Origin: Oopsacas minuta
Taxonomy: Eukaryota; Animalia; Porifera
Assembly: GCA_024704765.1 (NCBI GenBank)
Contig: JAKMXF010000321.1
Span: 992,001 to 1,056,000, forward strand
Reading direction: 5' to 3'
DNA: 64,000 nucleotides
Below are positions 6,224 to 56,462 of the stretch, in pieces. The position numbers and the translations under genes are program-made. The notes under the pieces are model-generated. The model made no database searches and was not told the DNA's origin. It saw only the letters and a list, made by a program, of their open reading frames with translations. Each line of letters starts with the position of its first letter. Position 1 is the stretch's first letter.

Positions 6224-6780
6224 TTAATACAAATAGGTTCAAGTAATTCAGTAAAAAGCAAAAATATAATTTGAATAACAGAAACAGAGAATTTAAGTAT
6301 TTTCAAAAAATGATTATCTCACTTTAGTACAAATAAAATTACTTCTAACAATAGTATTCTTAGTAGAAACATAATTCAATTGAATCTGCTCAGTACTTAT
6401 AACTAATAGGACAAGCTGAGTTTGTTGTACCAGTTTCAAGTTACAAAAATACTTAATTAATAATACATTATATCTATATTAGAGTGATACTAGTGATTAA
6501 CCAATTAGTAATAAGCCGATGATATGGGAAATAGCTCAGCATGAATTAAAGGAATTGATTTAATATGTATATTACCTTGTGTTGTGTAAGTATGATTGTA
6601 TTTCTATGTACTTATTAGCAATGCGGTAAATTAGTACGACAATCACAAATCAAATTATCAAATAAGAAGATGAAGAGATACACATGTAATGATATTACCT
6701 TGAAATCAGATGAGTTAAGATCTACTTTAAGGAATAAGGATGAAGCTGGGATAGTGTAAGCAATGTATAACTGTTTGTGG

Positions 6781-7596
6781 TTAGTCACTTAAGTTTAACT
6801 TAATCATAATTTCTTGGTTAAGGCGATCTAACTCAAGCCTAGCTTCCTCCAACTTAACTTTAGCTAGAGATAAATTGAGAGGTAAAGCTTTGTAGTAATT
6901 CTTCCTTTTCCTTAGCTCAGAGAGATTACTATTCATATTGCTGACCTCTTTTCGAAAAGAAGATATATTAGGATGAGAAATCTCTTCTCTAAATCCTGAC
7001 TCAGCTAATCTCTGCTCTAACTCTATTCTAGTTTGGATATACTCTTGTCTCTTCTTCTGTAGAAATATCATATCTGATTGCTTTTTAGGCTGAGACTCTC
7101 TCTCTTTTTCTAATTTCTCTTTAACTATCTTCGATTTAGCTTGTATTTCCCTAATAGCTTTATCTACAGCAGTTATTTTTCTTATCAAAGATAGATTAAT
7201 CTTATCAGATGGTAATACGTCATCTAGATCAGGGTCCTTGACACACATCATGTGATCACTAAGCATGAGAATTAAGCTAGCTGAGCTAGTGTCACGGGAC
7301 TTCAGAGTAACAGCTAAGCTAGCTAGGGAGTTGGTAAGATCGTTAACTCTATCAGGAATTGTATCTTGAGAGAAGTACAGAGAATTTAGTATCTTCTTAA
7401 GTCGATCAGATTCAATTCTCTGTTCAACACTCTTTTCTCTTATCTCTTCTAACACGAGAGACATTCCTTTCTCACCAGCCTTGAACTCATCAAAAATATT
7501 CTTCAAAACTTTGATCGTATCTTCATTTACTTCAAAAGGAGGCAGCTCTCCTCCGTACACCTCTCTCAACCAATGATTTACTATATACTGCTCCAT
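6781..7596 (-). CDS. HAUS1: HAUS augmin-like complex subunit 1, intronless, 271 aa
   Basis: WLREVYGGELPPFEVNEDT and YKALPLNLSLAKVKLEEARLELD match the recalled HAUS1 N- and C-terminal signatures (WLKKIFG..IPQYEVN; YLDLMPNPSLAQVKIEEAKRELD). Length is similar and the body is coiled-coil. Confidence 0.9.
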   Translation of the reverse strand: MEQYIVNHWLREVYGGELPPFEVNEDTIKVLKNIFDEFKAGEKGMSLVLEEIREKSVEQRIESDRLKKILNSLYFSQDTIPDRVNDLTNSLASLAVTLKSRDTSSASLILMLSDHMMCVKDPDLDDVLPSDKINLSLIRKITAVDKAIREIQAKSKIVKEKLEKERESQPKKQSDMIFLQKKRQEYIQTRIELEQRLAESGFREEISHPNISSFRKEVSNMNSNLSELRKRKNYYKALPLNLSLAKVKLEEARLELDRLNQEIMIKLNLSD

Positions 7597-7995
7597 TAGA
7601 TTAGTTAGCTACACAAACATTGTGTAGAGTATTATTAGAGAATGATAAAGATTCAAATTGAAGTTTTCGAAAATAATCTATCTATCAGAATTTAGCATAA
7701 TGGGTTATTTGTCGTTTAAGCAGTGCAATCAAATGGACAAATAACCAGCTAACTCTAGGACAAATGTACACAGATCATGTATAATACCTTTTCAGAATTC
7801 TCCTTGAATGTGTCCTAGAATATAAATTTAGAGATGGTGAAAATACCTAACAACCACTTTAGTTGTTTGCTGTTTATTAATAGTCCATTCAGTGGCGTAC
7901 CAAGCACCTTTGGTACCCGGGGCGGAATCTGAAGTTTGGAACCCCCATTTTCAGTAATATACAATATATAGCTAAGTAAGTATATTGTATATATA

Positions 7996-8568
7996 TTGAG
8001 TGGGCCAAAAAGAGGGGCCCGTGGACATTTCAGGCCAACTTGAAACTATTAGTCAATAAAAGCAATAATAATCTATTTATTCTATGTAAAGATAAGTTAG
8101 ATAATCCAAAGACGAAGTAATAGAGTATTCAGTAGAAGTCTTAGCGAGTTCAGAGAATTTTTGAAACGCCGTCTTTCAAGGAAATTACAGAAAACTTTTG
8201 CTCATATTCGATGTCAAAAATGCGCCCTGGAAATCGAGAATTCAGGGTTGGATTAAGAAATTTCAGACTGAGAGAACTGTTAAAAACCTAAATAGTCGGT
8301 CCGAAGACAGTGCAAGTCATTCCAGGAGAAATAGTTCTGAAGAATGTAATGGGAATTTTACTCTAAAAATCTAAAAATGAAAAGATTTTTACTGTGTTCA
8401 TCTAGAACATAAGCTCTAATCCTCTTACACTTTCAACCTACGAAAATAATAGCTTGTATTCGTCTTGTACGCCATTTTAGCTCTATAACTATAAGGTTTT
8501 GTTAATCTCTTCTAAATATTATGCACATTCGAAGCTAATTGTTCGGGCCCGTTTTTTGGCTCACCCTG
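7996..8568 (+). mobile_element. Internally deleted Tc1/mariner-type element
   Basis: Right end reads (reverse complement) TA-CAGGGTGAGCCAAAAAACGGGCCCG; the left end is a degenerate copy, TA-TTGAGTGGGCCAAAAAGAGGGGCCCG. The interior encodes a frameshifted FETPSFKEI...KSRIQGWIKKFQTERTVKNLNS, resembling the DUF4817-type N-terminal HTH of such transposases. Confidence 0.65.
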
Positions 8569-9584
8569 TATGTGAGATGTTTATTTCCAACATATGTTTT
8601 GAATGTTATATAATATAGGCATGATGAATCTATTTTGGTAAATAAACGTATTAGCTGTTAACTGCTACAATTTTGAAAAAATTAACGGTATAACCTTGCA
8701 GTTCTTTCAAACCAAATTTTTACTGTTAACAGATGATTCCGAGCTGCTAACAACCAATCGAAAGTCTCAATTTAGGTAATGCTTCGTGGCGTCGCTAAAC
8801 GTCAACGGGGCATAAGTAGACATTTCTCAGGAAGGGGGAACCACGGTGGGGAGGGGCAGATTTTCAATATGTAGTATACACAGCGAGCGTCCATAAGGAG
8901 GGCTTGGCCCCTAGGATAGTTTTTACAGCTCATATGTTAGAATATGGAACTACAGCTGCTTATTATAGCGCCAATGAAGCAATTATTCTCACTCATAGCC
9001 ATGTCTCACTTAATCTTGTATCTGGGTGTAAACTTAAAGGATGAATTTTACCTGTTCTGCGGCATTCCTCTCTTCTACCCATGGAAATCGGGTATCAAAA
9101 CATGTATTTTTGTTAGTGGATTTCAATGTGAAGATTCTCAAAATAGATTTCAGTATAGTCGGCACAGTAAAATATATGAGCACCAAAGTTGGTCCGGTTG
9201 ACTGATAGTATTTGCATTAGCAGTCCAAATTTTGGTATGGTTGAAAACGGACCCACTGAATCGTCTCGTATGACCACGAGTTAGACAAATGGAAATTACA
9301 TTTAGGGATAGCTGTCCCTGATTAGAATAAATAAAAATAATCCAGAAACCTTACTGTGGTCATAACTTTATACTATATAGAGAGGCTTACGCTTTCCTTC
9401 TCTTGGGAGAAACTTGCGTTTACCAACATAAGTAATAAGGTCATTAGCTAAAAGAATTGCTGATCATTTACAGATATAAATTTACATACCGAAAAATGTC
9501 TAAACTATATGAAATAATTCCCAATATACAAATAATACAGTGATAGTATGTAAGCCGGCAGTATATAGACAAACTATATATATC

Positions 9585-12500
9585 TCAGATATCTTGATAG
9601 CATTGGAATTTTCTCATTCTGTATAGCACTGAATCAGCTCTGTATTGTGTATACATTAGAGGCATGTATCCGAATTCATGAACGAATTTGTTAACACATT
9701 TGTGTCTTTCAGAGAAATGATTCTCGTCATTATACAGAGATGTACACCCTTCACAGTTAAATGTCCAGCGTGACGTCACCTTGATTGGAGGCTTTCTTGT
9801 TATGTGAGCTATCAGGAAATTCATTGCAATATCTTCACAGTTCATGAATTCATCTACAGTACGTCTGATGCTAGAAGGCAGCCAGTTAGAGTAAAGATAG
9901 AGATAGTACTTGTGTATGAAAGCAGCTCCAGTTAGTACCATAGATATCTCACATGTGTAGTTAGAATTGTATAACCACTTGTTATTGTGAATATCCCATA
10001 TGTGGAATCGAGCTGGAAACCCAACCAGTCGATCTCTGTTCTCTCTCCAGACACGAAATGCAAACTGAATATCATCTTTCCCTAGATTTATGTCGTCATC
10101 TAGTGACAGGACAGCTTCCGTCTCTATGTGGTCATAAGGAAGGAATCTGTTGTTTAGACTGTTGCCACTACCTCTTACAATCTAGCAGAAATAGATAACT
10201 ATATAAACAGCACTTTACATTAAGTAGAACTCAGATAAGAGTCATAAGAGGTAGTTCTTTGAGGAAACAAATGAGCACCTACTTTCCGAGTGTAATTCAT
10301 ATACGAAAATGATAATAAATATTAAAACAGAATATAAAGCATCATCCAGGATGAAATTGAAATGTGAAAATAATATTTATCGCCAAATAGTACTCCATAT
10401 GCTATATGTAAATCTAACAACCCAAAAACTGCTATAATACTAATCGAATTGTTAGAATATTTTCCTATTTTACTAACCAGGATGGGTACTTGTATGACAG
10501 GTAATTCTATGTCTCCTACGTCATCAGGATCATTCCAGACTACTATAACTTTGTGTAAGAAGGATACTCCTCTGAGTCTACTGAGTAGCTCCAGCAGCAA
10601 GTGCTGTCTCTTGTAGGTTAATATTACAGCTGTGAATAACTCTATTGGGGAGTTACCGAGCAGAAACTCCTGAAAGATAGGACTAGTTATGCCAGAGGCT
10701 TGAGCTACATGAGGAGAGATAGGAAAGGAAGGAGAGTATCCTTGTTCATAATGCATACTATTGGTCAGCTTTTGTTGCCATGGAGTTGGATGAACAGAGA
10801 AGTATGCGCCTAAATTAATAAATAATTGAATTCCTTAAATTATTTTAAGCATAGCAATGTAGTAGATTGGTTACCAGGAGGAGAGTCCCAATGGAGAGAG
10901 CGCTGAGATAGAAGAGGGTGCCATCTCCAAGGAATCTCATATGGAGAGTTTAGACTATCTTCTGGTGGGTATAATACCTCAGGGGTGTAAGAGGGGATGG
11001 AAGGAGGAGGGAGGGAGAGACGTGAGAAGAGGAGAGTCACACAAGTAAGGAGAGTGTGATAGGCGGAAGAGAAGTAATTTATCCAAATGAATCTACCTTG
11101 TTTTTTGTAGGAGAACACCTGATCATCTGACACCTGTCTGGAGATAATATAATTGTTGAGATTATAAGAACTTACAAATATATATTACAAATGATAAAAA
11201 TCATAGAGGAAGAACTAGAACATGAAGCTAGTGTGAAATTGTCATAAAATTAGAAAGAGTACATTTAAGTACGTGTTTGATATACTTTTTAAGGCTTCGT
11301 GACAACTTTTCGAGCACTACAATGCCTCTTAGAGTTTTTCTTAGCCAAACTATGTAAATCAATTTTCGCTGATAAAAACCATCACTAATTCATTAACTAA
11401 TTACCAATCTACAAGTATTACCTAATCAAGTAGTGGATCTCATGCAACCTGTTACGTGGCACATGTAGTACAGCTTTGCTCCAGTCAATAACCTCACTAT
11501 AAGGTAGACTAATCTCATCCCCACACACTACAGGTACTGCTCCTGTGTAGAGTGCTTCTATCAGCCTAACCAATTGAGCATGAATACCCTCACTGTCTGT
11601 ATCTACGGGGATGATAGAGAACATGCTATCCCTGTTTGAATTCAGTCTTGTCTGTTGATCTCCACAAATACTCCATGATTTGCTGGAGGAATAAGTAGCA
11701 GGACAGGAAAGCTGTATAGAGACTGCTGTCTTTAAGCTAGAGGATAGCTGTTCTAGATGTGACAGAAGAGGAGTAGTACCATCATAATAGCCTATATAAT
11801 ATCATAATTACAAATAATTACATCATCATTGATATGTCAATATATTTACCTGAAAAATAGATAAGATAATTCCTATGTAGCGGCAATAGTAAGGGCAGTT
11901 CACTCCAGGTATCCAGTTGATGCTGTAGGAGATCATCTAGTGAGAGGAGAGGAGGGATTAACATGTCATAACCAGGTCTCATCTGTTTTAGTGGTGAAGC
12001 CAGAAGTACACGGGAAGGTAGGGAAGATGGGAGAGAATACTTGTAGCTTGAATCAGAATCTAGCAACTGAATTAAGAGAATGGAATGTGACGTCTTAACC
12101 CATACATTAGATGTATGTAGTTGTGTTATAACAGAGTCTAAGTCTGATGATAGAGTTAAAGCTATAGTAAAGCAGGCAGCAGCTGGTCCTTCCAATACTT
12201 GGAGAGCTGAGTTTAGCGTGAAAACATCGATTAATTGTGTCAATGAGTTGTCAGACTAAATATAATGAAATATATAAATAACTGTAGGAACTTAAGAATC
12301 AATCTGTTAAGTAGCCTGATATTGATCCAAAATATAGGTAGAAATGTGATCGTAAATTTGTTATGTAGGAATTACTGGAAAATATTCATTGTTCCGAGTA
12401 CAAGCATTCAATAGGCTTGAAGACTTGGGACAGCGCTTCGCGAATCAATCACACTCATTTCCGCTAAGCTCGTTCGCCCGTTTGATAATTATGGAAGTAA

Positions 12501-45230: not shown

Positions 45231-46022
45231 CGGGCGTGCCTAATTTCCGGGAAGTGACGTGACGTTGTGGTAACCTCCCATGTTCATCATCCAAAGTGTA
45301 TAACAGACACTTCATGTATTCTGTGTTATCCCTACTATCCCGGGATCTTAGAGCTGGCATGTGAATTATTCTGAGGCCGGTATAGGCAGGTGAGGGTGGC
45401 CTGATAACCAATACAGTAAAACACTTGGGCAAACCAGCAATCTATGGCGTATCATAGGTAGTGTGAAATTTGTAAGGAGTCCCTATTTCACTGGATTGGT
45501 TTTTGATATGCTAGCGATATACGGACCTCAGGAGTCGCCAAATGCTTGTGTTTTAGGCCCGGTGTAAGCGTTTTTGGGGATCCAGTGATTTAGGGCCACA
45601 ACCTCAAAATAAGCGCTAGCAATTTCGCCTTTCATCCCTATATGATATATCGCTTGTTTTTTGGTATCCTAGTTCCGAATGTTGCTTACACCTGGCCTAA
45701 AACACAAGCATTTGGCGACCCCTGAGGTCCGTATATCGCTAGCATATCAAAAACCAATCCAGTGAAATAGGGACTCCTTACAAATTTCACACTACCTATG
45801 ATACGCCATAGATTGCTGGTTTGCCCAAGTGTTTTACTGTATTGGTTATCAGGCCACCCTCACCTGCCTATACCGGCCTCAGAATAATTCACATGCCAGC
45901 TCTAAGATCCCGGGATAGTAGGGATAACACAGAATACATGAAGTGTCTGTTATACACTTTGGATGATGAACATGGGAGGTTACCACAACGTCACGTCACT
46001 TCCCGGAAATTAGGCACGCCAG
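45231..46022. mobile_element. 792-bp foldback element with about 339-bp near-perfect TIRs
   Basis: Arms 45231-45569 and 45684-46022 differ at 3 positions by my reading; spacer 114 bp; flanking direct repeat TTCCGTT (45224-45230, 46023-46029). It explains the duplicated ORFs at 45118-45432 and 45821-46087. Confidence 0.9.
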
Positions 46023-46502
46023 TTCCGTTCCGTTCCGTTAATTATCGAAGCCCAGTTTGGAGGGGAGATATCTCTAAATACCTTTAGAAACTCATATTCT
46101 ACTGTCGAATATGAGTTATGCGAAGCGTCGCCTAATTTAAAAAACTTTTCGATAACAGCGGTTAACCGCTGTAATAAATATTCGTTAATTTCCACACACT
46201 TGCTATATTTTGAGTTTGTAGCTCTTACCTTCTCTTCCAAACAAGGGTCGTTTAAACATTAAGTAACGCACAATTCCCTAAATTTGAACTTGTCCGATCC
46301 AGGCCGAGAATACTCCCGGCATGTCAAAAATCAGCCCCAGGGGTCTTCCAGTTTCTTCAATTAATTCAGAACATACATATATATCTTATACGGTGGCTTA
46401 ATAGTATAGCCATGTATATATCGTATACCTTGAATTAGTGCCCAGCCGATAATGATATTCGTGGGTATTTTTTCGTATAATTTTCTTATCAAAATTACAA
46501 AT

Positions 46503-46622
46503 CAGGGTTTCATTTAGGGGGGGGGGGGGGGGGTATTTGCCCCCCTTGGATCTTAAGTGCCTCCCCTTACATTCTCAAAACTCTACTTGCCCCCCTTGCT
46601 CAAATGTCTGGATGAAACACTG
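46503..46622. mobile_element. 120-bp hAT-like MITE with internal poly-G
   Basis: CAGGGTTTCATTTAG versus reverse-complemented end CAGTGTTTCATCCAG; only a 5-bp flanking repeat (CAAAT). Confidence 0.55.
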
Positions 46623-47688
46623 CAAATGATTTGGATATTCACAAGCCTTGAAGCCATTTTCTAGCCCCTCGCGGGGCGCATATTCAGAGAAATACTGTTG
46701 AAATTTGTTAAAAATTGTAAATGTTACAAGATCGAAAAACCAATAGGCATATTTCTGTTTATTGAATAATTATTTGAATAAAGCTCCGTAATCTAGGGGA
46801 GGAGGTATTTAAATTTAATGAGCGGACGGGGAGGATTCGAGCAAAGTAAATTGAATAAATAGGTCAAAATGTGAAGTCTTTGGTGCCATGGCCTCACTGA
46901 ACTTTATAATAGATTTCCCCACTTATAGAAGGAAATTTCAAATGGTATCTGACATAATTATCTCTAAAGTATCCCATTCCCTACTTAAGAGGTTGCACTG
47001 TATATAAATGTTTGTTTTAAATACTTTTCTATTTCAGGTGAGACTTAGCCACTATATAGGATAGTAGTATTGGTATTAAGGCAAGTAAAAAATGGGGCTT
47101 TTCCAAACCCGACCGAAATTGTATCGGGTTTCGGGATGGTTGGATAGTCAGGGTTTAATAATTATTATAATATAGGATATTTAATGAAAGCCACATATTT
47201 TCGAGGCTGTATTTGAGTGGTAAAATTGACAAAAAAGAGGTTAAGAAAGATAATTAGCGAAATTTTATGGTCAAATTGCAATAAGATCATCTAGATTCTA
47301 GAAAAACAAATTATTGGTAAATCAAGGGGGAAACTGTTTTCGTGGGTTGTATCTACATAAACAGGAATGGAAAATTTTACAGTCTAACCTTAGAAATTTC
47401 TAAAATAGATATTTAGGAGGAAAAGTTTGCTGCGAAATAAAACCGGATAAACTTGCGAAATTTAAGAACCACTGATCTAGGATATCCATCTCCTCCTTAG
47501 CATTCTCAATATTATTAAGTACCCAATATGTCACTACATGATCTACTACTAGGAACACTTTATTCGAATTTACATTGACTTCATCTGGTTTTTTATCACA
47601 TTTGTCCTAACTGACCTTTCATCGTTAGCTGGGATTCACCAGTCTAAATCTCGACCGGTTCAATCTCTAATATGGACTATGGATTAAT

Positions 47689-48834
47689 ATGTCAAGCAGT
47701 TTGTTTATAGAAATGGATGAGGGTGATGACGTCGTTCCAATTGTGATAGATAGTGGTGCCAGAGGAACAAAAGCAGGTTTTGGTGGAGAAAACTCTCCTC
47801 GGGTAGTTTTCCCCAGCATTGTAGGTAGGGTTTGTCACCAGGGAGTAATGGTAGGCATGCCACACCGTTATGTATATGTGGGAGAGGAAGCTCAGAGTAA
47901 AAGAGCTATTCTAACGCTTAAAAATCCTATTGAACACGGTATAGTGACTAATTGGGATGATATGGAAAAGATATGGCATCACACATTCTACAATGAACTA
48001 AGGGTCGCTCCAGAAGAACACCCTGTCTTACTCACTGAGGCTATTTTCAATCCAAAAGCTAACCGAAAGATGACTGCACAAATAATGTTTGAGACATTCA
48101 ACAATCCTGCATTGTACATTTCCAACAATCAGGTGCTATCTTTGTACTCAAAAGGCAATACCACAGGAGTTGTAGTGGATTCAGGACTCGATTCAACACG
48201 AATAGTACCCATATACAAGGGACATGTGCTGGGTCATAGTGTTGAAAGACTGGGTATTGGAGGGGGACAGATTACTGACTATCTTATGAAACTATTGGCT
48301 GAATACGGGCATTCTTGGTGTTGTGGAGGTGAAACTGAATTGATGAATGACATCAAAGAAAAACTCGGTTACGCCAGAAAGAGCCTACCCAATGAAACAG
48401 GTGATGCTAACGTTGAGGTACTATATGAACTACCAGATGGACAGGAAATACCAATTAGAGAGGAACGATACAGATGTGTGGAGCCAGTATTTAACCCCTC
48501 CCTGATCGGATCAGAAGAAAATAGTATCCACGTATCAACTAACAATGCAATATTGAAAAGTGATTCAGATCTTCATAAACACTTATACAATAATATAGTA
48601 TTGTCAGGGGGTAACACTATGTTCCCTGGAATAGCTGAGAGACTATACAGTGAAGTATCAAACTTGGCTCCGAGTACCGCATCCATCAGAGTAATAGCAC
48701 ATCCTGAAAGGAAATACAGTGCGTGGATTGGTGGATCTATACTTTCTTCAATTGATAGTTTTGAGAAAATCCTTATTCCAAAAGTTAGTTATGATGAATA
48801 TGGACCAGAGATTGTTGATAGGAAATTTTTCTAG
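47689..48834 (+). CDS. Divergent intronless actin / actin-like protein, 381 aa (alternative start 47713)
   Basis: Full-length actin fold: D-loop [84 protein letters not shown]. Intact ORF, colinear with conventional actin apart from a 10-aa N-terminal extension and a 4-aa deletion. Confidence 0.95.
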
Positions 48835-49126
48835 CTATCATTTGTATGTATATAGGGAGTATAAATTTGAGTATGTCACGAAAAAAATGGCCAGGCCCGA
48901 CCAAATTTGGCAGGCCAAAAATGGTGCCACTTGGATTTGTTTAGGAGTGGAGTTAAAACAGTTAACCGTCTAACAGTTCTACTAACGGTAACTAACTATA
49001 TCTTGCTAACACCTGCTGGCTAACTTTTCATGGGCTTCTTCTGACTGCCCCATGTATCATGGAGTGTTACACTGCCAGCTGCTGATGCTTCTCAAACTTA
49101 TTATTCTCATTATTCTATTACCTATG

Positions 49127-49170
49127 TTCCGCGCCAAGACTTACCTCTATTGAAAATTTTTGGCGCGGAA
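49127..49170. promoter_or_regulatory. Inverted pair of E2F-type sites
   Basis: TTCCGCGCCAA (49127-49137) and TTGGCGCGGAA (49160-49170) form a perfect 11-bp inverted repeat with a 22-nt spacer. The second copy sits in TTTTTGGCGCGGAA, matching the E2F consensus TTTSSCGC. They lie 20 bp upstream of an ATG. Confidence 0.5.
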
Positions 49171-49190
49171 TATCTATACAAATCTATACT

Positions 49191-49415
49191 ATGTGTATTA
49201 GCAAGATGGCAACCTCACAACTTAGGTATATTTGTGGTGGTGTCTGTGGCTTTGAAGCATGTCTACAGGAATTCCTAACCGAGAAGGAACTGACGATGCA
49301 CTGTATCAATGAAGATGAAACTCAGGTGCACGCCATTAGACCTTTCTGCGCGCAATGTTTTATGATATTCGATGATTACGACAACCCAGTTGTCCATCAA
49401 TGTGAACTCGGAAAG
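49191..49415 (+). CDS. Zinc-finger exon, probable first coding exon of the MARF1-like gene
   Basis: Encodes Cx4C-x12-H and Cx2C-x12-HxC with C2H2-type Cx3F spacing. Ends in phase 0 at a consensus donor AAG|GTAAGT. A phase-0 acceptor CATAG| at 51701/51702 is in frame with the ATG at 51720. Confidence 0.5.
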
Positions 49416-50915
49416 GTAAGTAATCAAATTTCATATTTGGATTCAGGTTCTTATTTCTAAATTTAGACCAAAGAAGCGGACCTAACATTTAAGCATTTTG
49501 AATTCGATAAGATTTGTCTTGTATTGAAAACTCTTTCGATAATAACACCTTTATGGAGCCGGGGCATAGTCAGGGGGAATTGTGAGACCCGCAGCTCTCT
49601 CTTTCACTATTTGTGCACTATGTGGGGTCAAATTAGACCCCACATATTTGGTGTCATTTTGACCCCACTCCGTCAATATGACAGAAGTCAATGGAATTCT
49701 GGTCAAATTGGGGTCTGTTCTTACCCCGCTCAGTCAACTTTGGATAATTGTTTATCTCAATCGACGCTGTGTTAATTAAACTCTTAGGATTGTACGATAA
49801 ATATTTTTATTTGCCTAGTTAGCCAACGACAAAATATAATCATTATTCTCACTGTTGGACTAATCCTTGTCAAACTCCCGGAAATTTCGGTTTTTTATTT
49901 GGGAGTAGTACAGTAACGGTACCGGGATCGAGTAAATTCACCTTGCAGTACTGGTACCTGTGTCATAATGCCGCGTGTCCCCCAGGACCTGTGTCCCTAA
50001 GGTAAAACGTCCTTGTAGCACTAGGATGAGGAGTCCTCATTTAGGATATGTTGAAAACGCGAACTTTCCCACACTCGAATGTCCATGGAGGGGTCACACA
50101 ATTGCTTGTATTTTATATTTGCTCTATGGGACTGTAACAAATCCAATGGGCGGGCCTTAAGCTCCCTGTCCCTGGCAGAGCCCGTTTGAGAAATTCCAGG
50201 CCCTGGTGCTACAATAGGTCCCAGGCCCCTATCTGTTCTTGCGAATGAAAAATTTTAGGGACACAATTACATTTCTAAACGTTTCAAATAAGAAATCTAT
50301 GATATATTGAATATTTACATATTATTGAATATGCCATGATTTACTTTGCTACCTTACCCAGTAGAGTCTACGATATCACGAGGCCCTCGTAATATCGTTT
50401 CATTTATCCCGTCTCTAATACAATAGCAAGTACCGTCGGGATGTCATCCCGAGCCTTTAATCCTGAATTATTCTATTTTATTCCGATATTCTACGGATTA
50501 CAGATTTGCCTCAAGGTCAAATAATCGCGAAAGTCGGTTGAGAAGCACTTCTTCACATGTAAGTGTCTCTCTAAGAATCTGGGTATGCTTGATGGCACTT
50601 TTTTGTACGGAATTTATTGATCCTGTACGTGTTTGAAAGATCGGCACTTTGTGTCCTTCATTGCTGGCTGAAATAGTACAAGTTACCCGCCACGCACCTA
50701 AATACACCTTGTCCCGATATATCCCTATTAAGCGGAGTCTTTTGTATTAATAAGAGTCCCCAAAGGGGAACATCTCGCCCTAGGGCCAGATGTTCAGGGG
50801 ACTCCTTAGGTATGAAAATATACAGATTAGAAATTTTTCAAATCAACTAGATGTCACTACAAGTACACATGCCAAATTTGGTGTCTTAGGTGTGAACTGC
50901 AGGGCGAAACATATC

Positions 50916-51101
50916 CAGTGGAGTCTCCAAAAAACGGTACTCCGAGAAGCGGACAACCCCCTACAACGGACAAACCTCGTGGCACGGATTGAATTTGCCA
51001 AGCATGTAATTACTACTTGAGCAGTCTCCGAGGAGCGGACAATTCTCTACAACGGATAAATACCATATCCCCAACGTGTCCGTTATTCGGAGACTCCACT
51101 G
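50916..51101. mobile_element. Pogo/Tigger-like MITE
   Basis: CAGTGGAGTCTCCAAAAAACGG versus reverse-complemented end CAGTGGAGTCTCCGAATAACGG, with TA on the right. Confidence 0.7.
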
Positions 51102-51719
51102 TAGATATATATAGCCACTATGCTATGTAATAGAAGTAGTCGGCACAGTAAAAAGCGCAATTCAGACTATTCCATTTACTGGAATAGTAATTTCTCGATC
51201 CGATGTATTATATATGGACCATTGAAATTTCATAATCGTATCCTGAGTCTTAGGATACCTGAAAGAAATGTTTAACCGAATACTGCTGGGGAGACGTGCC
51301 ATTTTATGACTTCCTTTTCGTTACGAACGTAATACTTCGGCCATAATCTGGAATGCCCTATAACACCAACGATAGAATCGTTTTGTATTAGTTTTCTATG
51401 AAAAGACCAAGGATTCTCTAGTAAGTAGAAACCCAAAATTGTGAGACATACGACGAGATCGTGAGAGTTGAGAGCACTGTATTTCTACACCAAAACAGAA
51501 ATACATTTAGTTCCTATTTGGGCAATGTTTCAATTTCTTTCCAGTAAGATTATATATATATATTTATATATATATATTCAGGATGATATGGCAGAATAAA
51601 GTACTGTACGAATTGCTATTACCAGCAGTAACATATTGTTGAACTTCAATAGACCTAATAGCTCCTTTCTATGTAGATTTATGTAAGTAATTATGTCATA
51701 GGCTCAAGCCCAGATCAGC

Positions 51720-53819
51720 ATGGCTCTGTCACAATGTGATACAACTATAATAGACTTAACTTTAGGAGGTCAGCTGGGAGATGAACTATGTTCATTCAGA
51801 CATGAAGATTGGCTCTTGTCTAAAATCCCATTACAATCGGATTCATCTAGTGATGACGGTATCCTAGATGAGACAGTTATTCCTATTACAGCTGCTGGTA
51901 AGAAGAGGAAATCTATGCAAGATATTAGCTCACCTGAGGGAAGGAGGAAGAGTCCTAGAATTGAAGCAAAGAGAAACCAAAAACCAATTACTGAGAAATC
52001 AACCAGGAATAAACGCGATGAGCAATCTAAAAATAAACAAATCTTTAATGATACCAAAACTGAGCCTGAACTAGATAGCACTGTTATATCGGGTAGTTTA
52101 GGATCAAAGCTACCTGTAATATCACCAATCAGGTTTGTTCCTGAATCAACAATCACTTCTTCTGTCATAAAGCCTAACATTTCTATTACTAAAATGGTTT
52201 CTAAACAGAAAAAAATGAGGATTGTACAACCGACTAATCCAGTTAAATGCTCTTCTACTCAATCTATTGCATCAATTTTAAATAAACGAATACCCACCCC
52301 TCCTAAACCTTCAGTCACAACTGCTCGATCTAATCAACAGGAAATCTCGACTAAACCATCAGATACACAAATCCACACGAGATCTGTCCCTCAAACTGAG
52401 GATTCGAACCAGCAAAAAGTGTTAGAAAACACGGGTATATTCTGGGATATTGAGAATATAGCTATTCCTCCTAACATCAGTGTATCTTCTCTAGTGAGAA
52501 AAATAAGAAATACCTTTGTTGGCATAGATAAGAGAGAAGTAGAGTTCATGTGTGTATGTGATGTCCATAAAGAGAACAGGTATGTATTTATATTTACCGA
52601 GCATTTTAATTTAAATAGTTCTGTGCTATGCGGCGATACTAGCTATTTCATTTGTATTGCTATTGTAGAACATACCTTTCCTGTCCATTGTCTCCTAAAA
52701 TACTATGTAACTATCAAAAGCATCATTTATTAGACTAGATGTTAACCTAAAGTTAACTACTATGACATACAGCCTCACCTTAGCGGATTCTAGCTTCAGT
52801 TATTCTTAATGTTTATGTATTGCCTTCTTTGTAGACAAATGATAGATGAGCTGAATTCGTGTAACGTTACGATAGTACATGTGGCCTGCTTCTCTAAAAA
52901 CGCAGCTGATGAGAGGCTGAAGCACTATCTTTACAGATTCGCTCAAACCTATCCTCCTCCCAGCACAGTTGTAGTGCTTAGTGGAGATGTAAACTTTGCT
53001 CATGTGATATCTAACTTAAGTCATTTCTACACACTCCAAACTGTTCTTATACATAACCTTCAGTGCTCTACTGTCCTCAAGGATTCTGCTCATAAGAGTA
53101 TTCTATTCGACGAGTTCATACAAGGAATTGGTTGGTAATTTTAGTACATGCTGTATATAGTGATAATTCCTCTCTTACCAATTCTATCACTATATCCATC
53201 TACTGTAATATTCATAAATAATAGGTAATAATGTTTATTTTATACAGAGCTTGATGCGGAGTTTGCCAAAATTTAGTAACTAACCAGCTTAGATTCAGAA
53301 ATTCAATAAGTATTACGTAATTATTATCAATCGATTTGGAACATTTATCATCCGTTAAAATTATAATCATATACATAAATGTTGGATCTTGGATGACAAC
53401 CTGCAGTGCGGTTCTCTTTACCCAATTCCACTAGTAATTATCATTTGAAGCTATTTTGATTAATATTTGAAATCTGATTTATCATTTAATAAATGTGTGT
53501 ATGTTTCCTAATACATGTAAGATACTATTTTATTTTCTCAGGTCCTCCACGTAGAGTGACACACAATCAACCCAGCTTCCTCCTGATTGACAATCTCCCC
53601 AGGATAGCTTATGGAGAATTGTATAATCGTTTAGACAGATTGTGTGATAACACGGGTGGGAAGATAGTTAATCTCGACCAAATGATGGGAGTTATCAGAT
53701 TTTCTACTCTCGAGCTATGCATCAGAGCTCAAAAGAGATTGAATAACCATTATCTTAGACAGGGGATGTGTCCTATTAGAGCTAGATTCTCTCCTGACAC
53801 CATCCAAACATTTAGATGA
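51720..53819 (+). CDS. MARF1: MARF1/Limkain-b1-like NYN ribonuclease with one RRM, 477 aa from this ATG
   Basis: Exons 51720-52579, 52835-53130, 53542-53819 (1434 nt, phases 2 and 1). NYN domain GIFWDIEN..REVEFMCVCD..KNAADERL..VLSGDVNFA; RRM1 LLIDNLP..NRLDRLCDNTGGKI..RAQKRL. Both match the recalled MARF1 NYN and RRM1. Confidence 0.88.
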
Positions 53820-56462
53820 ATTCAAATTAGGTTATAACACGTCTGTTACAACCTCACTGTTATAGGTAAACTGATAGGCTATTTCTATTTATCACAATAG
53901 ATTTTAGCTTGTTGGTGTTCTCACTTATTGGTACTGGAGTACAGAACGAGTTCTTAATTTCCTTTTATGTTTGTCGCAAATATATCACAATTTGTACAGT
54001 TGTATTAAATATAACAGCCACTCATTTCAGGTCCCTACTCCCAAGTGGAGATTTGTGTTAATTCCGTTCCCCTATTAGCAACTAAAACTCGTGCAAAATA
54101 CGAGTTGCTAATAAAGGAACTACAATGCAAGCCTAACTATCTGCATTCATACACTAGCTTTCTGTGACAATATGTATACATTACATTAGCACCTTTGGCT
54201 TACAAAACATGGTCCGTAATTCAGTATGTAATACATTGAATCATTCAGCTCAGGAAAGGCGGAAATTTTAGTCATGCAAGCTTCAGGTCCGGCCATCTTC
54301 CGTATCAGCTCAGCTCCGCCTGCGTTGCTAACTTTGTCCAAAGCCCAAATTTTGAAAGATAAGAATTAGTGTTACCTCGTTTGGTTTCCTCCAGTTCAAG
54401 TGAGTCGCTAGGTTTATTTGGTTCTTGCTAGTTGGTGCTGGCTCTTGAGGTTTACCTACACTTGTGTAGGGTTTTTTCCTTAACTTAGAGGTCTTTCAGT
54501 GGGTGCCTTGGGTGGTGGTGGACTTGAGGGCCGCTGGTTCGCTAAGCACCAACCACTTCTGCCCAGGTGGGCTTGTTCCACTGCTCATGTGTGTCCTTCT
54601 GAAAAGTCTTCAGTGGCAGCCTCCTAGTGAAGGTTAAAATTTCACACCTCGAATGTAAATTTAACAGCTTTCAGTTGGGGGCTCATATGTGTATCCGTGG
54701 CTGTCATTTCGCCTGGGTCATCTGTAGATCCCTTCGGGAGCATTTGGGTATTATATGTTGAGTGTTGCTCCTTGGTTCGGTACTGGTCCTTGCATTCCTC
54801 CGGGAACTCCGTTATCTAACCGTCGTAGCCTTCTAGCGGCATTGGAATTTGTATATTTTAATTTGGAAGGTATTGTTAATCTTAATGTATGGCTATTCCC
54901 CATTCCCAGCTTATATAGGTTCGTTTCTATGTAGAAGTACGAAAGCCCACACAAATTGCCCGCACATATAGAGACCCCACTTATAGAGGTTGTATTGCAT
55001 ATAGAAGGACACACAGCCATAAAACAGTATACTGTACTTCCAAAGAAAGACATCTGGTTACCCTGGTGCATAGTCCGTGAGCTTTTTCTTCCATTCAAGC
55101 TTGTCAAAAGGTGGCCAGGTCATGTCATGTTTTGACCTTTTGACAAGCCTTACCTGACCTGACTCAAAATGACCTTCATTTTCAAGTCATATACAGCTAA
55201 TTTGAGGCTAATTTCTGGCCAATTATGGAATTTATTCAAACAGCTATACTAGACCGAATTTGAATATCATATCTTTATTTAATGGTATTCGTTTCTAAGT
55301 TCAATAATTCATAAAGAATGAATAATTCATCATCTAATATTAATTTTGGACAAGAAATATATTTTTAAGAGGTTTGACCAGCATTTGTAGCAAAAACTTG
55401 TATTATGCATGTAAAATTAGTTTCTCATCAGGAATTTCTTCGGAAAACTGGCACGGTGTACCCCCCTGAAAAGAACAAAATACATAACCCTGAGCTGCAC
55501 TAACAGTCTGTCGGCTGGACATTTTAAAATTAAATTCATTCTAGTAAATTATGCTAATTAGACTCTCAGTGTTATGTTAGGGTTACTTTTCTTATAAACT
55601 ATTATCCTTTCTTGTATATATTTTGCACTATACCGAAAAACGGAGTGCTGACCAGCATATTGAGAGTAATTGGTAGGTGGTCCTTGCAGTATACGGATTT
55701 ACATGAAGAATAATCGAGTTTTAATTATATAGTTTGTTAATTGAATCGTTCATTATTTTTTCAATTAATTGTCAACTTAGGTCCGTTTTAACATACGTAT
55801 ACGATTTGAAATTATACACTGATACACACTATTGATAATAGCTACATATTTGTGAATAATTCTAACTTCATTTATGTAGTATATGAAGATATTTGACATG
55901 ACTGTATACTGGACGATTTCACGCATATTTCCTCTGCTATGATTTGATTTCAATATATTTCCATATTGAGCTCACAAGGACAATTCAAGGTGTAGAACAA
56001 ATCAATTTTCTATTATCTGTACTAATATCCAAGATATCTTTACATCAACTATTTGAACTCATTTATCTTATGTCATGTCATAATATTTTATTATAAATTC
56101 TCAAATAATTCCGTGTCGTCTGCATTTAATATGCACGGGAAGGTTCTAACATTTCCGGTATAGACACGAATAAATATATACTTATTGAGAAGGATATGAC
56201 TTATGCTACTGAACCTAATCTCACTTACTATTACCCAATTCAATATTTGATGATACAATATCTTATTAGCTCACACCTTACTGACAATTATCATTTCAGA
56301 AACCCCCAATACCTAATACATAACGTGTCTCTATTTATACTAATTATATGTGTATCTGCCTATCAGTTAGTAACCATATAAATCCTATAACTATGATTTC
56401 TCAATCGAATCTCCACAAATAGCAATTAATTAGGTATCTTATGCAATTGCCTCATACTCTTG

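What the first reader, a model, noticed from the sequence alone, without database searches (positions are those of the whole stretch)
47689..48834. Divergent actin with a rewired nucleotide pocket but intact polymer-contact D-loop
Seen, in conventional actin numbering (offset +10): P1 loop DNGSGMCK to DSGARGTK (S14A, G15R); P2 loop DSGDGVTH to DSGLDSTR (D157L, G158D, H161R); catalytic Q137N with a Gln shifted to 138; C374F; a 4-aa deletion in the 222-235 region. D-loop HQGVMVGM and H73 are retained and the ORF is intact. Known: Q137 and H161 serve ATP hydrolysis, and S14 and D157/G158 bind phosphates. Inference: a hydrolysis-poor or non-dynamic structural actin, probably of retrogene origin. 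If the host is a glass sponge, note that F-actin has been reported in spicule axial filaments, making this a candidate scaffold actin (speculative).
Basis: partly seen in the sequence, partly recalled or inferred. Interest (0 to 1): 0.75.

Follow-up and report, generated by a model that had tools for sequence, protein, structure and literature searches.

The report
Glass-sponge divergent actin, remodelled ATP pocket
This is a real gene of the glass sponge Oopsacas minuta, apparently transcribed, for an actin whose ATP-splitting pocket has been rebuilt; it belongs to a small, conserved, fast-evolving family found so far only in this sponge and in a few unnamed assemblies that look like related sponges, and nothing links it to the glass skeleton.

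Summary

The host is the glass sponge Oopsacas minuta. The gene is already deposited as 'actin'.

It is not a one-off. A strongly supported 12-member clade (100/99) has all members replacing G15, Q137, D157, G158 and V159, while keeping D11, K18, D154, G156, the adenosine loop and mostly K336. The clade holds 4 O. minuta genes and 8 proteins from unnamed assemblies that are probably other glass sponges, one probably Vazella. It is not an Arp orthologue.

Long-term dN/dS is 0.13-0.47, against 0.05-0.07 for conventional actin.

The query has two young copies, 97% and 92% identical. Overall dN/dS among the three is about 1, but it is mosaic: about 2.7 in codons 1-215 and about 0.24 in codons 216-381. 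The coding sequence has no indels or stops, although the flanks are full of indels.

One public run holds a spliced contig of the neighbouring gene, so it is RNA. It covers the coding sequence deeply.

The young copies arose by DNA segmental duplication of at least 8 kb, not by retroposition. The D-loop is not conserved in the family. I found no evidence for the spicule-scaffold idea.

Verdict: a new variant of a known kind (lineage-specific divergent actin), of moderate interest.

The parts
47689..48834 (+). Coding sequence of the divergent actin (381 codons plus TAG). The annotated alternative start is Met9 at 47713.
   Evidence: Public proteins of 373 aa, named 'actin [Oopsacas minuta]', are.
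47749..47772 (+). Phosphate-1 loop DSGARGTK (actin 11-18). D11, G13 and K18 are kept. Changes are N12S, S14A, G15R, M16G and C17T.
47836..47859 (+). D-loop core HQGVMVGM (actin 40-47). It is kept here, but its flanks are changed and it is not conserved in the family.
48124..48132 (+). N-N-Q at actin 136-138. The catalytic Gln137 is replaced, and a Gln sits at 138.
48178..48201 (+). Phosphate-2 loop DSGLDSTR (actin 154-161). D154, S155 and G156 are kept. Changes are D157L, G158D, V159S and H161R.
48607..48624 (+). Adenosine loop GGNTMF (actin 301-306). G301 and G302 are kept. Changes are S/T303N and Y306F.
47462..49306 (.). First block of the segmental duplication shared with the 97% copy 17.9 kb downstream (C321:1057378 onwards, outside the window). 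It is 98.05% identical and spans 227 nt upstream, the coding sequence and 472 nt downstream.
53464..55724 (.). Second block of the same duplication (98.4% identical). The 4.2 kb between the blocks (49307-53463) is present only in this copy.

Best explanation
SHOWN:
- The ORF is a functional gene of Oopsacas minuta that appears to be transcribed. It encodes a lineage-specific divergent actin.
- It belongs to a conserved family: 4 genes in O. minuta and 8 proteins from five or more unnamed assemblies that are probably other glass sponges.
- The whole family has rebuilt the part of the actin pocket that clamps the gamma-phosphate and activates water. G15 becomes R/K/D/A/N, Q137 becomes N/K/S/G, D157 becomes hydrophobic or basic, G158 gains a side chain, V159 becomes S/C, and H161 is variable.
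- The family keeps the residues that hold Mg, the alpha/beta-phosphates and adenosine: D/E11, G13, K18, D/E154, G156, K213/E214, G301-G302 and K/R336.
- The family is under purifying selection that is several-fold weaker than on conventional actin.
- The query was duplicated recently at the DNA level. Its C-terminal half is still constrained, while its N-terminal half (subdomains 1, 2 and 4, the pointed-end side) changes at or above the neutral rate.

INFERRED:
- The protein still folds as actin and probably still binds an adenine nucleotide.
- It no longer runs the polymerisation-triggered ATP hydrolysis and Pi-release clock of conventional actin.
- It would therefore act as a slowly hydrolysing or non-hydrolysing actin-fold subunit whose assembly state is not timed by nucleotide.
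- It most likely works together with conventional actin, by co-assembly or end-binding.
For: Identity and fold:
- Full-length Pfam Actin match, with beta-actin as the best solved relative.
- ESMFold2 gives the partner chain a pLDDT of 84-85.

Host:
- The nearest public proteins are 'actin [Oopsacas minuta]'.

Family:
- 12-row clade with 100/99 support. Arp1 and Arp2 of the same genome fall outside it.
- Table of pocket residues across the family.
- All 160 non-family actin-length proteins fetched here have the canonical pocket pattern, apart from one G15V and one D157E.

Selection:
- dN/dS is 0.13-0.27 between the query and distant family members, and 0.13-0.47 within the family. Conventional actin gives 0.05-0.07.
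- Among the three young copies, codons 1-215 have 38 nonsynonymous and 4 synonymous changes, and codons 216-381 have 6 and 7 (Fisher p = 0.0017).
- Subdomain 3 against the rest gives p = 0.001.
- The coding sequence has no indels. The flanks have 4, 15 and 33 gap openings in the three comparisons, so the chance of none in the coding sequence is 1e-3 to 1e-11.
- All 16 differences between the query and its 97% copy lie in the first 610 of 1143 nt (p = 4e-5).

Expression:
- Run X3 holds a contig joined across a GT-AG intron of the neighbouring gene (window 49416 to 51702), so it is RNA.
- In X3 the coding sequence has word depth of about 1,500-11,000. Upstream bins read 0-40, and 132 in the bin just before the start. 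Depth falls to 3-9 in the bins from 49437 to 50224.
- The query-specific G at 48298 carries about two thirds of the depth there.

Contact with actin:
- The predicted complex with conventional actin scores 0.50 against a best control of 0.00 and is rated 'weak support'. By the tool's calibration, 51 of 78 solved complexes and 2 of 108 mismatched pairs reach the pass mark. Only 5 of those 78 solved complexes, and all 4 mismatches that passed, scored 0.60 or under. The three runs share at least 93% of their contacts, and the partner's pLDDT is at least 84.

Known biochemistry:
- Q137 and H161 position the attacking water (PMC10062479).
- V159N slows depolymerisation after Pi release (PMC2149338).
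- Q137K occurs in working deep-sea fish actins (PMC3896411).
Against: - There is no biochemical evidence for nucleotide binding, ATPase activity or polymerisation.
- Overall dN/dS among the three young copies is about 1. The query lineage carries changes at sites conserved in the family: G63A, Y69N, D56E and Y198H shared with L002, and R39C and D51Y of its own. Some decay cannot be excluded.
- Filament-contact residues (D-loop, 200-208, 322-325, the tip of the hydrophobic plug) are poorly conserved in the family. This argues against a canonical homopolymer.
- The expression evidence comes from contigs of one run whose type is not on record. Contig depth is a poor measure of expression level, and near-identical paralogues share words.
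- The complex prediction is weak and may reflect the model's memory of solved F-actin structures.
- The split at codon 215 was chosen after seeing the data. The subdomain split was not.
- That the foreign samples are glass sponges is inferred, not documented.
Confidence: 0.6

Rival explanations
1. It is a young redundant duplicate on its way to becoming a pseudogene. The ORF is intact only because too little time has passed.
For: - Pairwise dN/dS among L001, L002 and L003 is 1.0-1.1.
- Coding divergence (1.4-4.3%) is about the same as flank divergence (1.6-5.5%).
- There are radical changes at conserved sites: W86L and H87C in L003, G63A and Y69N in L001/L002, and R39C and D51Y in the query.
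- Only about 2.1 stop codons would be expected by chance, so the probability of seeing none is 0.12.
Against: - No indel occurs in 1146 coding columns in any pair, while the flanks have 4, 15 and 33 gap openings (P 1e-3 to 1e-11).
- Codons 216-350 have 2 nonsynonymous and 7 synonymous changes (dN/dS 0.08, p = 0.0006), and the nonsynonymous-to-synonymous ratio differs between the two halves (p = 0.0017).
- The 3' half of the coding sequence is identical between the query and L002, although both neighbouring stretches differ.
- Contigs of the RNA run cover the coding sequence.
- The family is conserved across species with dN/dS of 0.13-0.47.
Confidence: 0.12
2. It is an Arp-like, non-polymerising actin-fold subunit. 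It would work as a monomer inside some complex, or as a filament-end binder, rather than as a filament-forming actin.
For: - The catalytic and gamma-phosphate residues are lost, while the fold and adenosine contacts are kept.
- The filament interfaces vary within the family: D-loop 33% pairwise identity, 200-208 at 39%, 322-325 at 24%. Some other surfaces are conserved in a family-specific way: 'KLLSESGYS' at 191-199, the target-binding groove at 71%, and 'YDEYGP'.
- The young copies vary on the pointed-end side (subdomains 2 and 4) and are constant in subdomain 3.
Against: - There are no Arp-type insertions.
- It is 60% identical to actin, which is closer than Arp1 (about 51% in this genome).
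- It is not orthologous to Arp1 or Arp2.
- No partner is known.
- The predicted contact with conventional actin has only weak support.
Confidence: 0.2
3. It is the scaffold actin ('silactin') of the axial filament in glass-sponge spicules.
For: - F-actin has been reported in hexactinellid axial filaments (PMC9009123, PMC11274843).
- The mass-spectrometry searches in that work used a 2018 sponge database. By date (inferred, not checked) it held no glass-sponge genome, so divergent paralogues could not have been detected.
- A non-dynamic actin would suit a permanent template (inference).
Against: - The peptides matched a conventional actin entry. Anti-beta-actin antibody and phalloidin both stained the filaments.
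- In A. vastus only one of 43 actin-like genes is up-regulated in the growing osculum, and it is the conventional one.
- Another group saw no 42 kDa band in hexactinellid silica extracts.
- Filament contacts are not conserved in the family.
- No localisation data exist.
Confidence: 0.03
4. The gene arose as a processed retrocopy of an intron-bearing parent.
For: - The gene is a single exon.
- Its O. minuta relative on C166 (P0125) has one 500-nt GT-AG intron.
Against: - About 30 actin-like genes here are single ORFs, the conventional actins included. PMC12146513 states that only one O. minuta actin gene has an intron.
- Foreign family members are also single ORFs.
- The query and L002 share at least 8 kb of flanking DNA, including the neighbouring spliced gene. 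L003 shares more than 1 kb of upstream sequence.
- No poly(A) tract follows the stop codon.
Confidence: 0.07

Closest known systems
Conventional cytoplasmic actin (for example human beta-actin, and O. minuta L004/L005 on contig C22)
   Same: - The fold and the length are the same, with about 60% identity end to end.
- D11, G13, K18, D154, G156, K213/E214, G301-G302, K336 and H73 are kept.
- The stretch '[38 protein letters not shown]' is almost identical.
   Different: - G15R, S14A, Q137N, D157L, G158D, V159S, H161R and C374F, plus a 4-residue deletion.
- Altered W-loop (YKGHVLG) and hydrophobic plug (LIGS).
- It evolves several-fold faster: dN/dS 0.13-0.47 against 0.05-0.07.
Lineage-specific divergent actins and orphan actin-like proteins. 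Examples: HdA6 of the sponge Halisarca dujardini (PMC12146513); from my own knowledge, mammalian testis ACTL7A/B and ACTRT, Drosophila Arp53D and Chlamydomonas NAP1.
   Same: - Derived from actin and restricted to one lineage.
- Faster evolving than conventional actin.
- Often intronless and multi-copy.
- Presumably specialised in function.
   Different: - This family is defined by a coordinated replacement of the gamma-phosphate clamp and the catalytic residues, in a protein with no extensions or insertions.
- Its tissue and its role are unknown.
- HdA6 contains an intron and keeps much higher identity to actin.
Conserved actin-related proteins (Arp1/centractin, Arp2, Arp3 and the nuclear Arps)
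   Same: The actin fold is reused with modified surfaces. From my own knowledge, some nuclear Arps have lost ATP hydrolysis or binding.
   Different: - It is not orthologous to them. O. minuta Arp1 (L020) and Arp2 (L029) sit outside the clade, and both keep G15, Q137, D157, G158, V159 and H161.
- It has no Arp-type insertions.
Natural and laboratory single-site pocket variants: deep-sea fish alpha-actin Q137K (PMC3896411), yeast act1-159 V159N (PMC2149338) and Q137A (PMC10062479)
   Same: - Lys at 137 occurs in four family members.
- Every family member has a polar residue at 159.
- These variants show that such changes alter hydrolysis or post-hydrolysis dynamics without destroying the fold or polymerisation.
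   Different: Those are single substitutions in otherwise canonical actins. Here five or six pocket positions change together, two of them otherwise invariant glycines.

Membership tests
Actin family (Pfam PF00022; actin/Hsp70/sugar-kinase ATPase fold) | A full-length match to the actin profile above the curated threshold | tested here: met
   390.7 bits against a cut-off of 27, covering profile positions 1-410 of 410.
Actin family (Pfam PF00022; actin/Hsp70/sugar-kinase ATPase fold) | The phosphate-1, phosphate-2 and adenosine motifs of the fold are present | tested here: inconclusive
   The anchor residues D11, G13, K18, D154, G156, G301 and G302 are present. The second glycine of each phosphate loop (G15, G158) is replaced.
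Conventional (filament-forming, ATP-hydrolysing) actin | Invariant catalytic and gamma-phosphate residues S14, G15, Q137, D157, G158, V159 and H161 | tested here: not met
   All seven differ in the query (A, R, N, L, D, S, R). The 160 non-family actins fetched here keep them, apart from one G15V and one D157E.
Conventional (filament-forming, ATP-hydrolysing) actin | Very high sequence conservation (about 90% or more between phyla) under strong purifying selection | tested here: not met
   60% identity to O. minuta and human actins. dN/dS is 0.13-0.47, against 0.05-0.07 for conventional actin.
Conventional (filament-forming, ATP-hydrolysing) actin | Polymerises, and hydrolyses ATP on polymerisation | not testable with these tools
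   The only evidence is a predicted contact with conventional actin, rated 'weak support' (score 0.50, best control 0.00).
Named Arp classes (Arp1, Arp2, Arp3) | Orthology: groups with that Arp in a tree, and scores best against it | tested here: not met
   The top 60 solved matches are all actins. Arp1 (L020) and Arp2 (L029) of the same genome lie outside the 100/99 clade. Arp3 and the nuclear Arps were not placed in the tree.
Glass-sponge 'rewired-pocket' divergent actin family (defined in this report) | Lies in the 12-row clade and carries the shared marks: residue 15 not Gly, A135S, residue 137 not Gln, A138Q, residue 157 not Asp, residue 158 not Gly, V159S/C, E167K, F266L, L267I, Y306F | tested here: met
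   Tree support is 100/99.
Processed retrogene | Homology to the parent stops at the transcript ends, a poly(A) remnant is present, and the parent has introns | tested here: not met
   Homology with L002 extends over at least 8 kb and includes the neighbouring gene. No poly(A) tract follows the stop. Intronless structure is the rule for actins in this genome.

The most novel reading that the evidence does not exclude
Glass sponges may run a second, large set of actin-fold proteins beside conventional actin, whose assembly is not timed by ATP hydrolysis.

In O. minuta about 20 of the roughly 30 actin-like genes lack the catalytic Gln137. These include the 20-row superclade (98/94 support), and most of them also lack D157 and/or G158. 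A. vastus is reported to have 43 actin-like genes.

The family studied here would be the most actin-like branch of that set. It would co-assemble with or cap conventional filaments to build long-lived cytoskeletal tracks in the giant syncytium, and it might be adaptively diversifying on its pointed-end face.
Probability: 0.15. Interest if true: 0.75.

Novelty: new variant of a known kind. Interest (0 to 1): 0.42.

Why it matters
Actin's catalytic pocket is among the most invariant protein sites in eukaryotes. Here a protein otherwise 60% identical to actin has replaced five or six of those residues, two 'untouchable' glycines among them. A whole family carries this pattern, appears in RNA and is kept by selection.

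That makes it a natural experiment on what the ATP clock of actin is for. It also gives a concrete entry point into the unexplained expansion of actin-like genes in glass sponges, which are syncytial animals. Recombinant protein would quickly show whether an actin can work without the hydrolysis timer.

It does not, at present, bear on how glass spicules are templated.

Tried and rejected
- AlphaFold2 on a 19-sequence alignment gave a poor model (mean pLDDT 52, pTM 0.49). The alignment was too shallow, so I drew no conclusion and did not use the model. ESMFold2 in the complex job folded the protein with pLDDT 84-85.
- The predicted complex with conventional actin is only 'weak support' and may come from the model's memory of F-actin structures. 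It gives no interface.
- Synteny: the neighbours of the foreign family members are a fucosyltransferase with HAUS3, a 781-aa protein, and a family-A DNA polymerase. Their orthologues are on O. minuta contigs C299/C28 and C44, and none lies beside an O. minuta family member. One-to-one orthology of the query with any foreign gene could therefore not be set.
- Relationships inside the clade (query trio, C166 gene, P0124 group) are unresolved (88/83, drawn as an open fork).
- Earlier notes of this scan on the word 'actin' concerned other genes.
- The supplementary tables of PMC12146513, which list O. minuta actins, are not held. I did not read out the peptide tables of PMC9009123, because the 2018 search database could not have held these paralogues.
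- I did not run the exhaustive representative-protein search. The operators asked to spare it, and clustering at 50% identity would probably merge this family with conventional actin.
- Read laying could be run only once and only on contigs. Expression level, transcript ends and the share of each paralogue therefore remain rough.
Full report
**1. The observation**

window:47689-48834(+) is an uninterrupted ORF of 381 codons ending in TAG. It matches the Pfam Actin model over its whole length (390.7 bits). It aligns end to end with beta-actin structures (E 2e-145).

- P1 loop DSGARGTK: S14A and G15R, plus N12S, M16G and C17T.
- P2 loop DSGLDSTR: D157L, G158D and H161R, plus V159S.
- S-N-N-Q at 135-138: Q137N, with Gln at 138.
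- C374F.
- A 4-residue gap after 'SLPNE'.
- H73 kept.

The D-loop core HQGVMVGM is kept, but seven flanking positions differ from conventional actin.

These are not ordinary variations.

**2. Host and genomic setting**

The nearest public proteins are three 373-aa entries named 'actin [Oopsacas minuta]'. They start at the second Met, and two carry the accessions KAI6646172.1 and KAI6649463.1. The genome is 61.5 Mb, and the window is contig C321:992001-1056000.

The genome holds about 30 near-full-length actin-like ORFs, almost all uninterrupted:
- Five conventional or near-conventional actins (L004-L008).
- Arp1 (L020, 612 bits to Arp1 against 443 to actin).
- Arp2 (L029).
- About 20 divergent genes. 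In all of these except L022 the catalytic Gln137 is replaced, and in most of them D157 and/or G158 as well.

The literature already notes that O. minuta actin genes are intronless but for one (PMC12146513). It also notes that Aphrocallistes vastus has 43 actin-like genes (PMC10282587). The O. minuta genome paper mentions only a conventional actin homologue. I found no description of the pocket signature.

**3. A conserved family**

Searches restricted to the divergent middle of the protein recovered relatives:
- P0125, an O. minuta gene on C166 with a single 500-nt GT-AG intron.
- P0124, P0175, P0176, P0177, P0178, P0179, P0180 and P0288, from ENA/Logan assemblies without organism names.

A maximum-likelihood tree puts these together with the query and its two close copies in a clade of 12, with 100/99 support. 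That clade sits inside a 20-row clade of divergent O. minuta actins (98/94). Conventional actins, Arp1 and Arp2 fall outside (the first tree is).

Rows left out of that tree were the partial ORFs L017, L023, L026 and L030 and the four longest branches L024, L025, L027 and L028.

The foreign samples are probably other glass sponges, for these reasons:
- One record is labelled BUSC20-1_SAMN14422896. This fits Busch et al. 2020 on Vazella pourtalesii, BioProject PRJNA613976.
- In that sample the gene lies beside an orthologue of the peculiar O. minuta paralogue L008 (100/99).
- Neighbouring genes have single, equally uninterrupted orthologues in O. minuta at 55-78% identity.

This identification is an inference, not a record.

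**4. What the family shares**

Every member replaces these positions:

| Position | Conventional | In the family |
|---|---|---|
| 15 | G | R/K in seven rows, otherwise D, A or N |
| 137 | Q | N, K, S or G |
| 157 | D | L, V, F, K, S or H |
| 158 | G | D, N, R, M, E or Q |
| 159 | V | S or C |

H161 is variable. S14A is peculiar to the O. minuta trio.

Kept residues are D/E11, G13, K18, D/E154, S155, G156, K213/E214 (in all but two members), G301-G302 and K/R336 (Q in one).

So the contacts for Mg, the alpha/beta-phosphates and adenosine survive. The backbone clamp around the gamma-phosphate and the residues that position the attacking water do not.

Established work assigns Q137 and H161 to water activation (PMC10062479). 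V159N gives filaments that fail to destabilise after Pi release (PMC2149338). Q137K is tolerated in working deep-sea fish actins (PMC3896411).

The inference is a protein that may still hold an adenine nucleotide but has lost the polymerisation-triggered hydrolysis and Pi-release clock.

Filament-contact residues are not well kept in the family. Pairwise identity within the family is 33% for the D-loop, 39% for 200-208 and 24% for 322-325. The plug tip reads L-I-G-S/F/L. The retained D-loop of the query is therefore not a family trait and is weak evidence for polymer contacts.

**5. Selection**

Between the query and distant family members dN/dS is 0.13-0.27. Within the family, including pairs with unsaturated dS, it is 0.13-0.47. 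Conventional actin compared over similar distances gives 0.05-0.07. The family is constrained but evolves several-fold faster.

The query has two young copies:
- L002, 97% identical, 17.9 kb downstream and just outside the window.
- L003, 92% identical, on contig C361.

But the changes are mosaic:
- Codons 1-215: 38 nonsynonymous and 4 synonymous changes (dN/dS about 2.7; p = 0.06 against neutrality).
- Codons 216-381: 6 and 7 (dN/dS about 0.24; p = 0.011).
- Codons 216-350: 2 and 7 (dN/dS 0.08; p = 0.0006).
- Fisher test between the two halves: p = 0.0017. This boundary was chosen after seeing the data.
- The a-priori split of subdomain 3 against the rest gives p = 0.001.

All 16 differences between the query and L002 lie in the first 610 of 1143 nt, although the 3' flank differs (p = 4e-5).

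No indel occurs in the coding sequence in any pair. The aligned flanks carry 4, 15 and 33 gap openings, so the chance of none in the coding sequence is 1e-3, 2e-5 and 1e-11. The absence of stop codons alone is not significant (P = 0.12).

Most variable sites among the three copies are also variable in the family. Each lineage has a few changes at conserved sites: W86L and H87C in L003, G63A and Y69N in the L001/L002 stem, and R39C and D51Y in the query.

My reading is as follows. The copies are maintained as protein-coding genes. The C-terminal half (subdomain 3 and the end of subdomain 1) is constrained. The pointed-end half (subdomains 2 and 4 and the N-terminal part of subdomain 1) is relaxed or diversifying. 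L003 looks the most damaged.

**6. Origin of the copies**

The query and L002 share two blocks. window 47462-49306 is 98.05% identical and window 53464-55724 is 98.4% identical. A 4.2-kb stretch (49307-53463) is present only beside the query.

The first exon of the neighbouring gene straddles that boundary. The simplest history is a DNA duplication of at least 8.3 kb carrying both genes, followed by a deletion in the second copy.

L003 shares more than 1 kb of upstream DNA with both of the other copies, with indels. No poly(A) tract follows the stop codon.

Retroposition is therefore excluded for the recent copies. For the founder of the family nothing can be said, because intronless structure is the rule for actins here.

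**7. Expression**

Four public runs of one sample and study hold the stretch, and their library types are not on record. When the contigs are laid on window 45300-51200, three runs cover genes and spacers alike, which looks like DNA. One of them carries a Nextera adaptor.

Run X3 is different:
- It has no depth in 7 of 30 bins.
- Word depth is about 1,500-11,000 over 47664-48845.
- Upstream bins read 0-40, and 132 in the bin just before the start.
- Depth is 3-9 in the bins from 49437 to 50224.
- A repeat at 50816-51200 reaches 8,000-10,000 in the DNA-like run X1 but only about 500 in X3.

X3 also has a contig that leaves the genome at 49416 and continues with 19 letters that occur once in the window, at 51703. 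This joins a GTAAGT donor to a TCATAG acceptor. It is a spliced junction of the neighbouring gene, so X3 is RNA.

At 48298 the query carries G, while L002 and L003 carry A. There the G form holds about two thirds of the X3 depth. L003-type letters at 47753 and 47782 hold about 15%.

This indicates that the query and L003 are both transcribed. Contig depth is a crude measure, and the tool warns against ranking genes by it.

**8. Contact with conventional actin**

A predicted complex of the query with O. minuta conventional actin scored 0.50 in all three runs (0.51, 0.50, 0.50), against 0.00 for the best of three controls. The verdict was 'weak support'.

By the tool's calibration, 51 of 78 solved complexes and 2 of 108 mismatched pairs reach the pass mark. 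Only 5 of those 78 solved complexes scored 0.60 or under, and so did all 4 mismatches that passed. The runs share at least 93% of their contacts, and the partner's pLDDT is at least 84.

Because F-actin structures are known, this shows likeness to actin rather than binding.

**9. The spicule idea**

Axial-filament actin was identified by phalloidin, an anti-beta-actin antibody and peptides matched to a conventional actin entry. The search database was a 2018 sponge set, which by its date (my inference, not checked) held no glass-sponge genome. It could therefore neither detect nor exclude these paralogues.

In A. vastus the only actin-like gene up-regulated in the growing osculum is the conventional one. 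Another group saw no 42-kDa band in hexactinellid silica extracts.

Nothing ties this family to spicules.

**10. Verdict**

This is a real, apparently transcribed member of an undescribed but already deposited family of glass-sponge actins with a systematically rebuilt hydrolysis site. It was recently amplified in O. minuta by DNA duplication.

It works most like a lineage-specific divergent actin or orphan actin-like protein. It fails the membership tests for conventional actin (catalytic residues, conservation), for Arp1 and Arp2, and for a retrogene.

The hydrolysis-poor mechanism is inferred from residue roles and has not been measured.

Noticed in passing
Whole genome G000 (loci L004-L030): O. 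minuta holds about 30 near-full-length actin-like ORFs, almost all uninterrupted. About 20 of them have lost the catalytic Gln137, and most of those also D157 and/or G158. Only the conventional actins, Arp1, Arp2 and L022 keep Gln137.
   Followed up: partly
window 49191-49416 and 51702 onwards: The neighbouring gene (the zinc-finger/NYN-nuclease candidate of another first-stage note) is spliced in RNA. An X3 contig joins 49415/49416 to 51702/51703 across a GT-AG intron of about 2.29 kb. Exon 1 has very high word depth in that run.
   Followed up: partly
window 49307-53463, compared with C321:1059217 (locus L045, about position 3217): This 4.2-kb stretch lies between two duplicated blocks and is missing from the downstream duplicate. 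The second copy of the neighbouring zinc-finger/NYN gene is therefore largely deleted.
   Followed up: partly
window 45233-45569 and 45684-46020: A 337-nt inverted repeat, 99.4% identical.
   Followed up: no
window 50816-51200: Word depth is very high here in the DNA-like runs (about 8,000-10,900 in X1, against a few hundred nearby), and there are many loose ends. This looks like a high-copy repeat inside the neighbour's intron.
   Followed up: no
window 46524-46602: Three of the four runs (X1, X2, X4) show contigs that skip 77 nt and carry 21 other letters instead. X3 shows the same skip, but its replacement letters are not listed. This is an assembly difference or an allele.
   Followed up: no
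G000:C44:794426-795547 (L008) and L031:10970-12085: A near-conventional actin paralogue has a rewritten D-loop ('ARYNNFMPGMGNKEA'). It is conserved at 90% identity in the probable Vazella sample, where it lies 1.8 kb from the family member P0124.
   Followed up: partly
G000:C166 (locus L026; protein P0125): The O. minuta relative of the query has a 500-nt GT-AG intron in the variable 228-235 region. It is probably the single intron-bearing O. minuta actin gene mentioned in PMC12146513.
   Followed up: partly
L040:252-1325(-) and L040:3001-4074(+): In the probable Vazella sample the family member P0180 occurs as two identical copies in head-to-head orientation, 1.7 kb apart. This is another very recent duplication in the family.
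   Followed up: no
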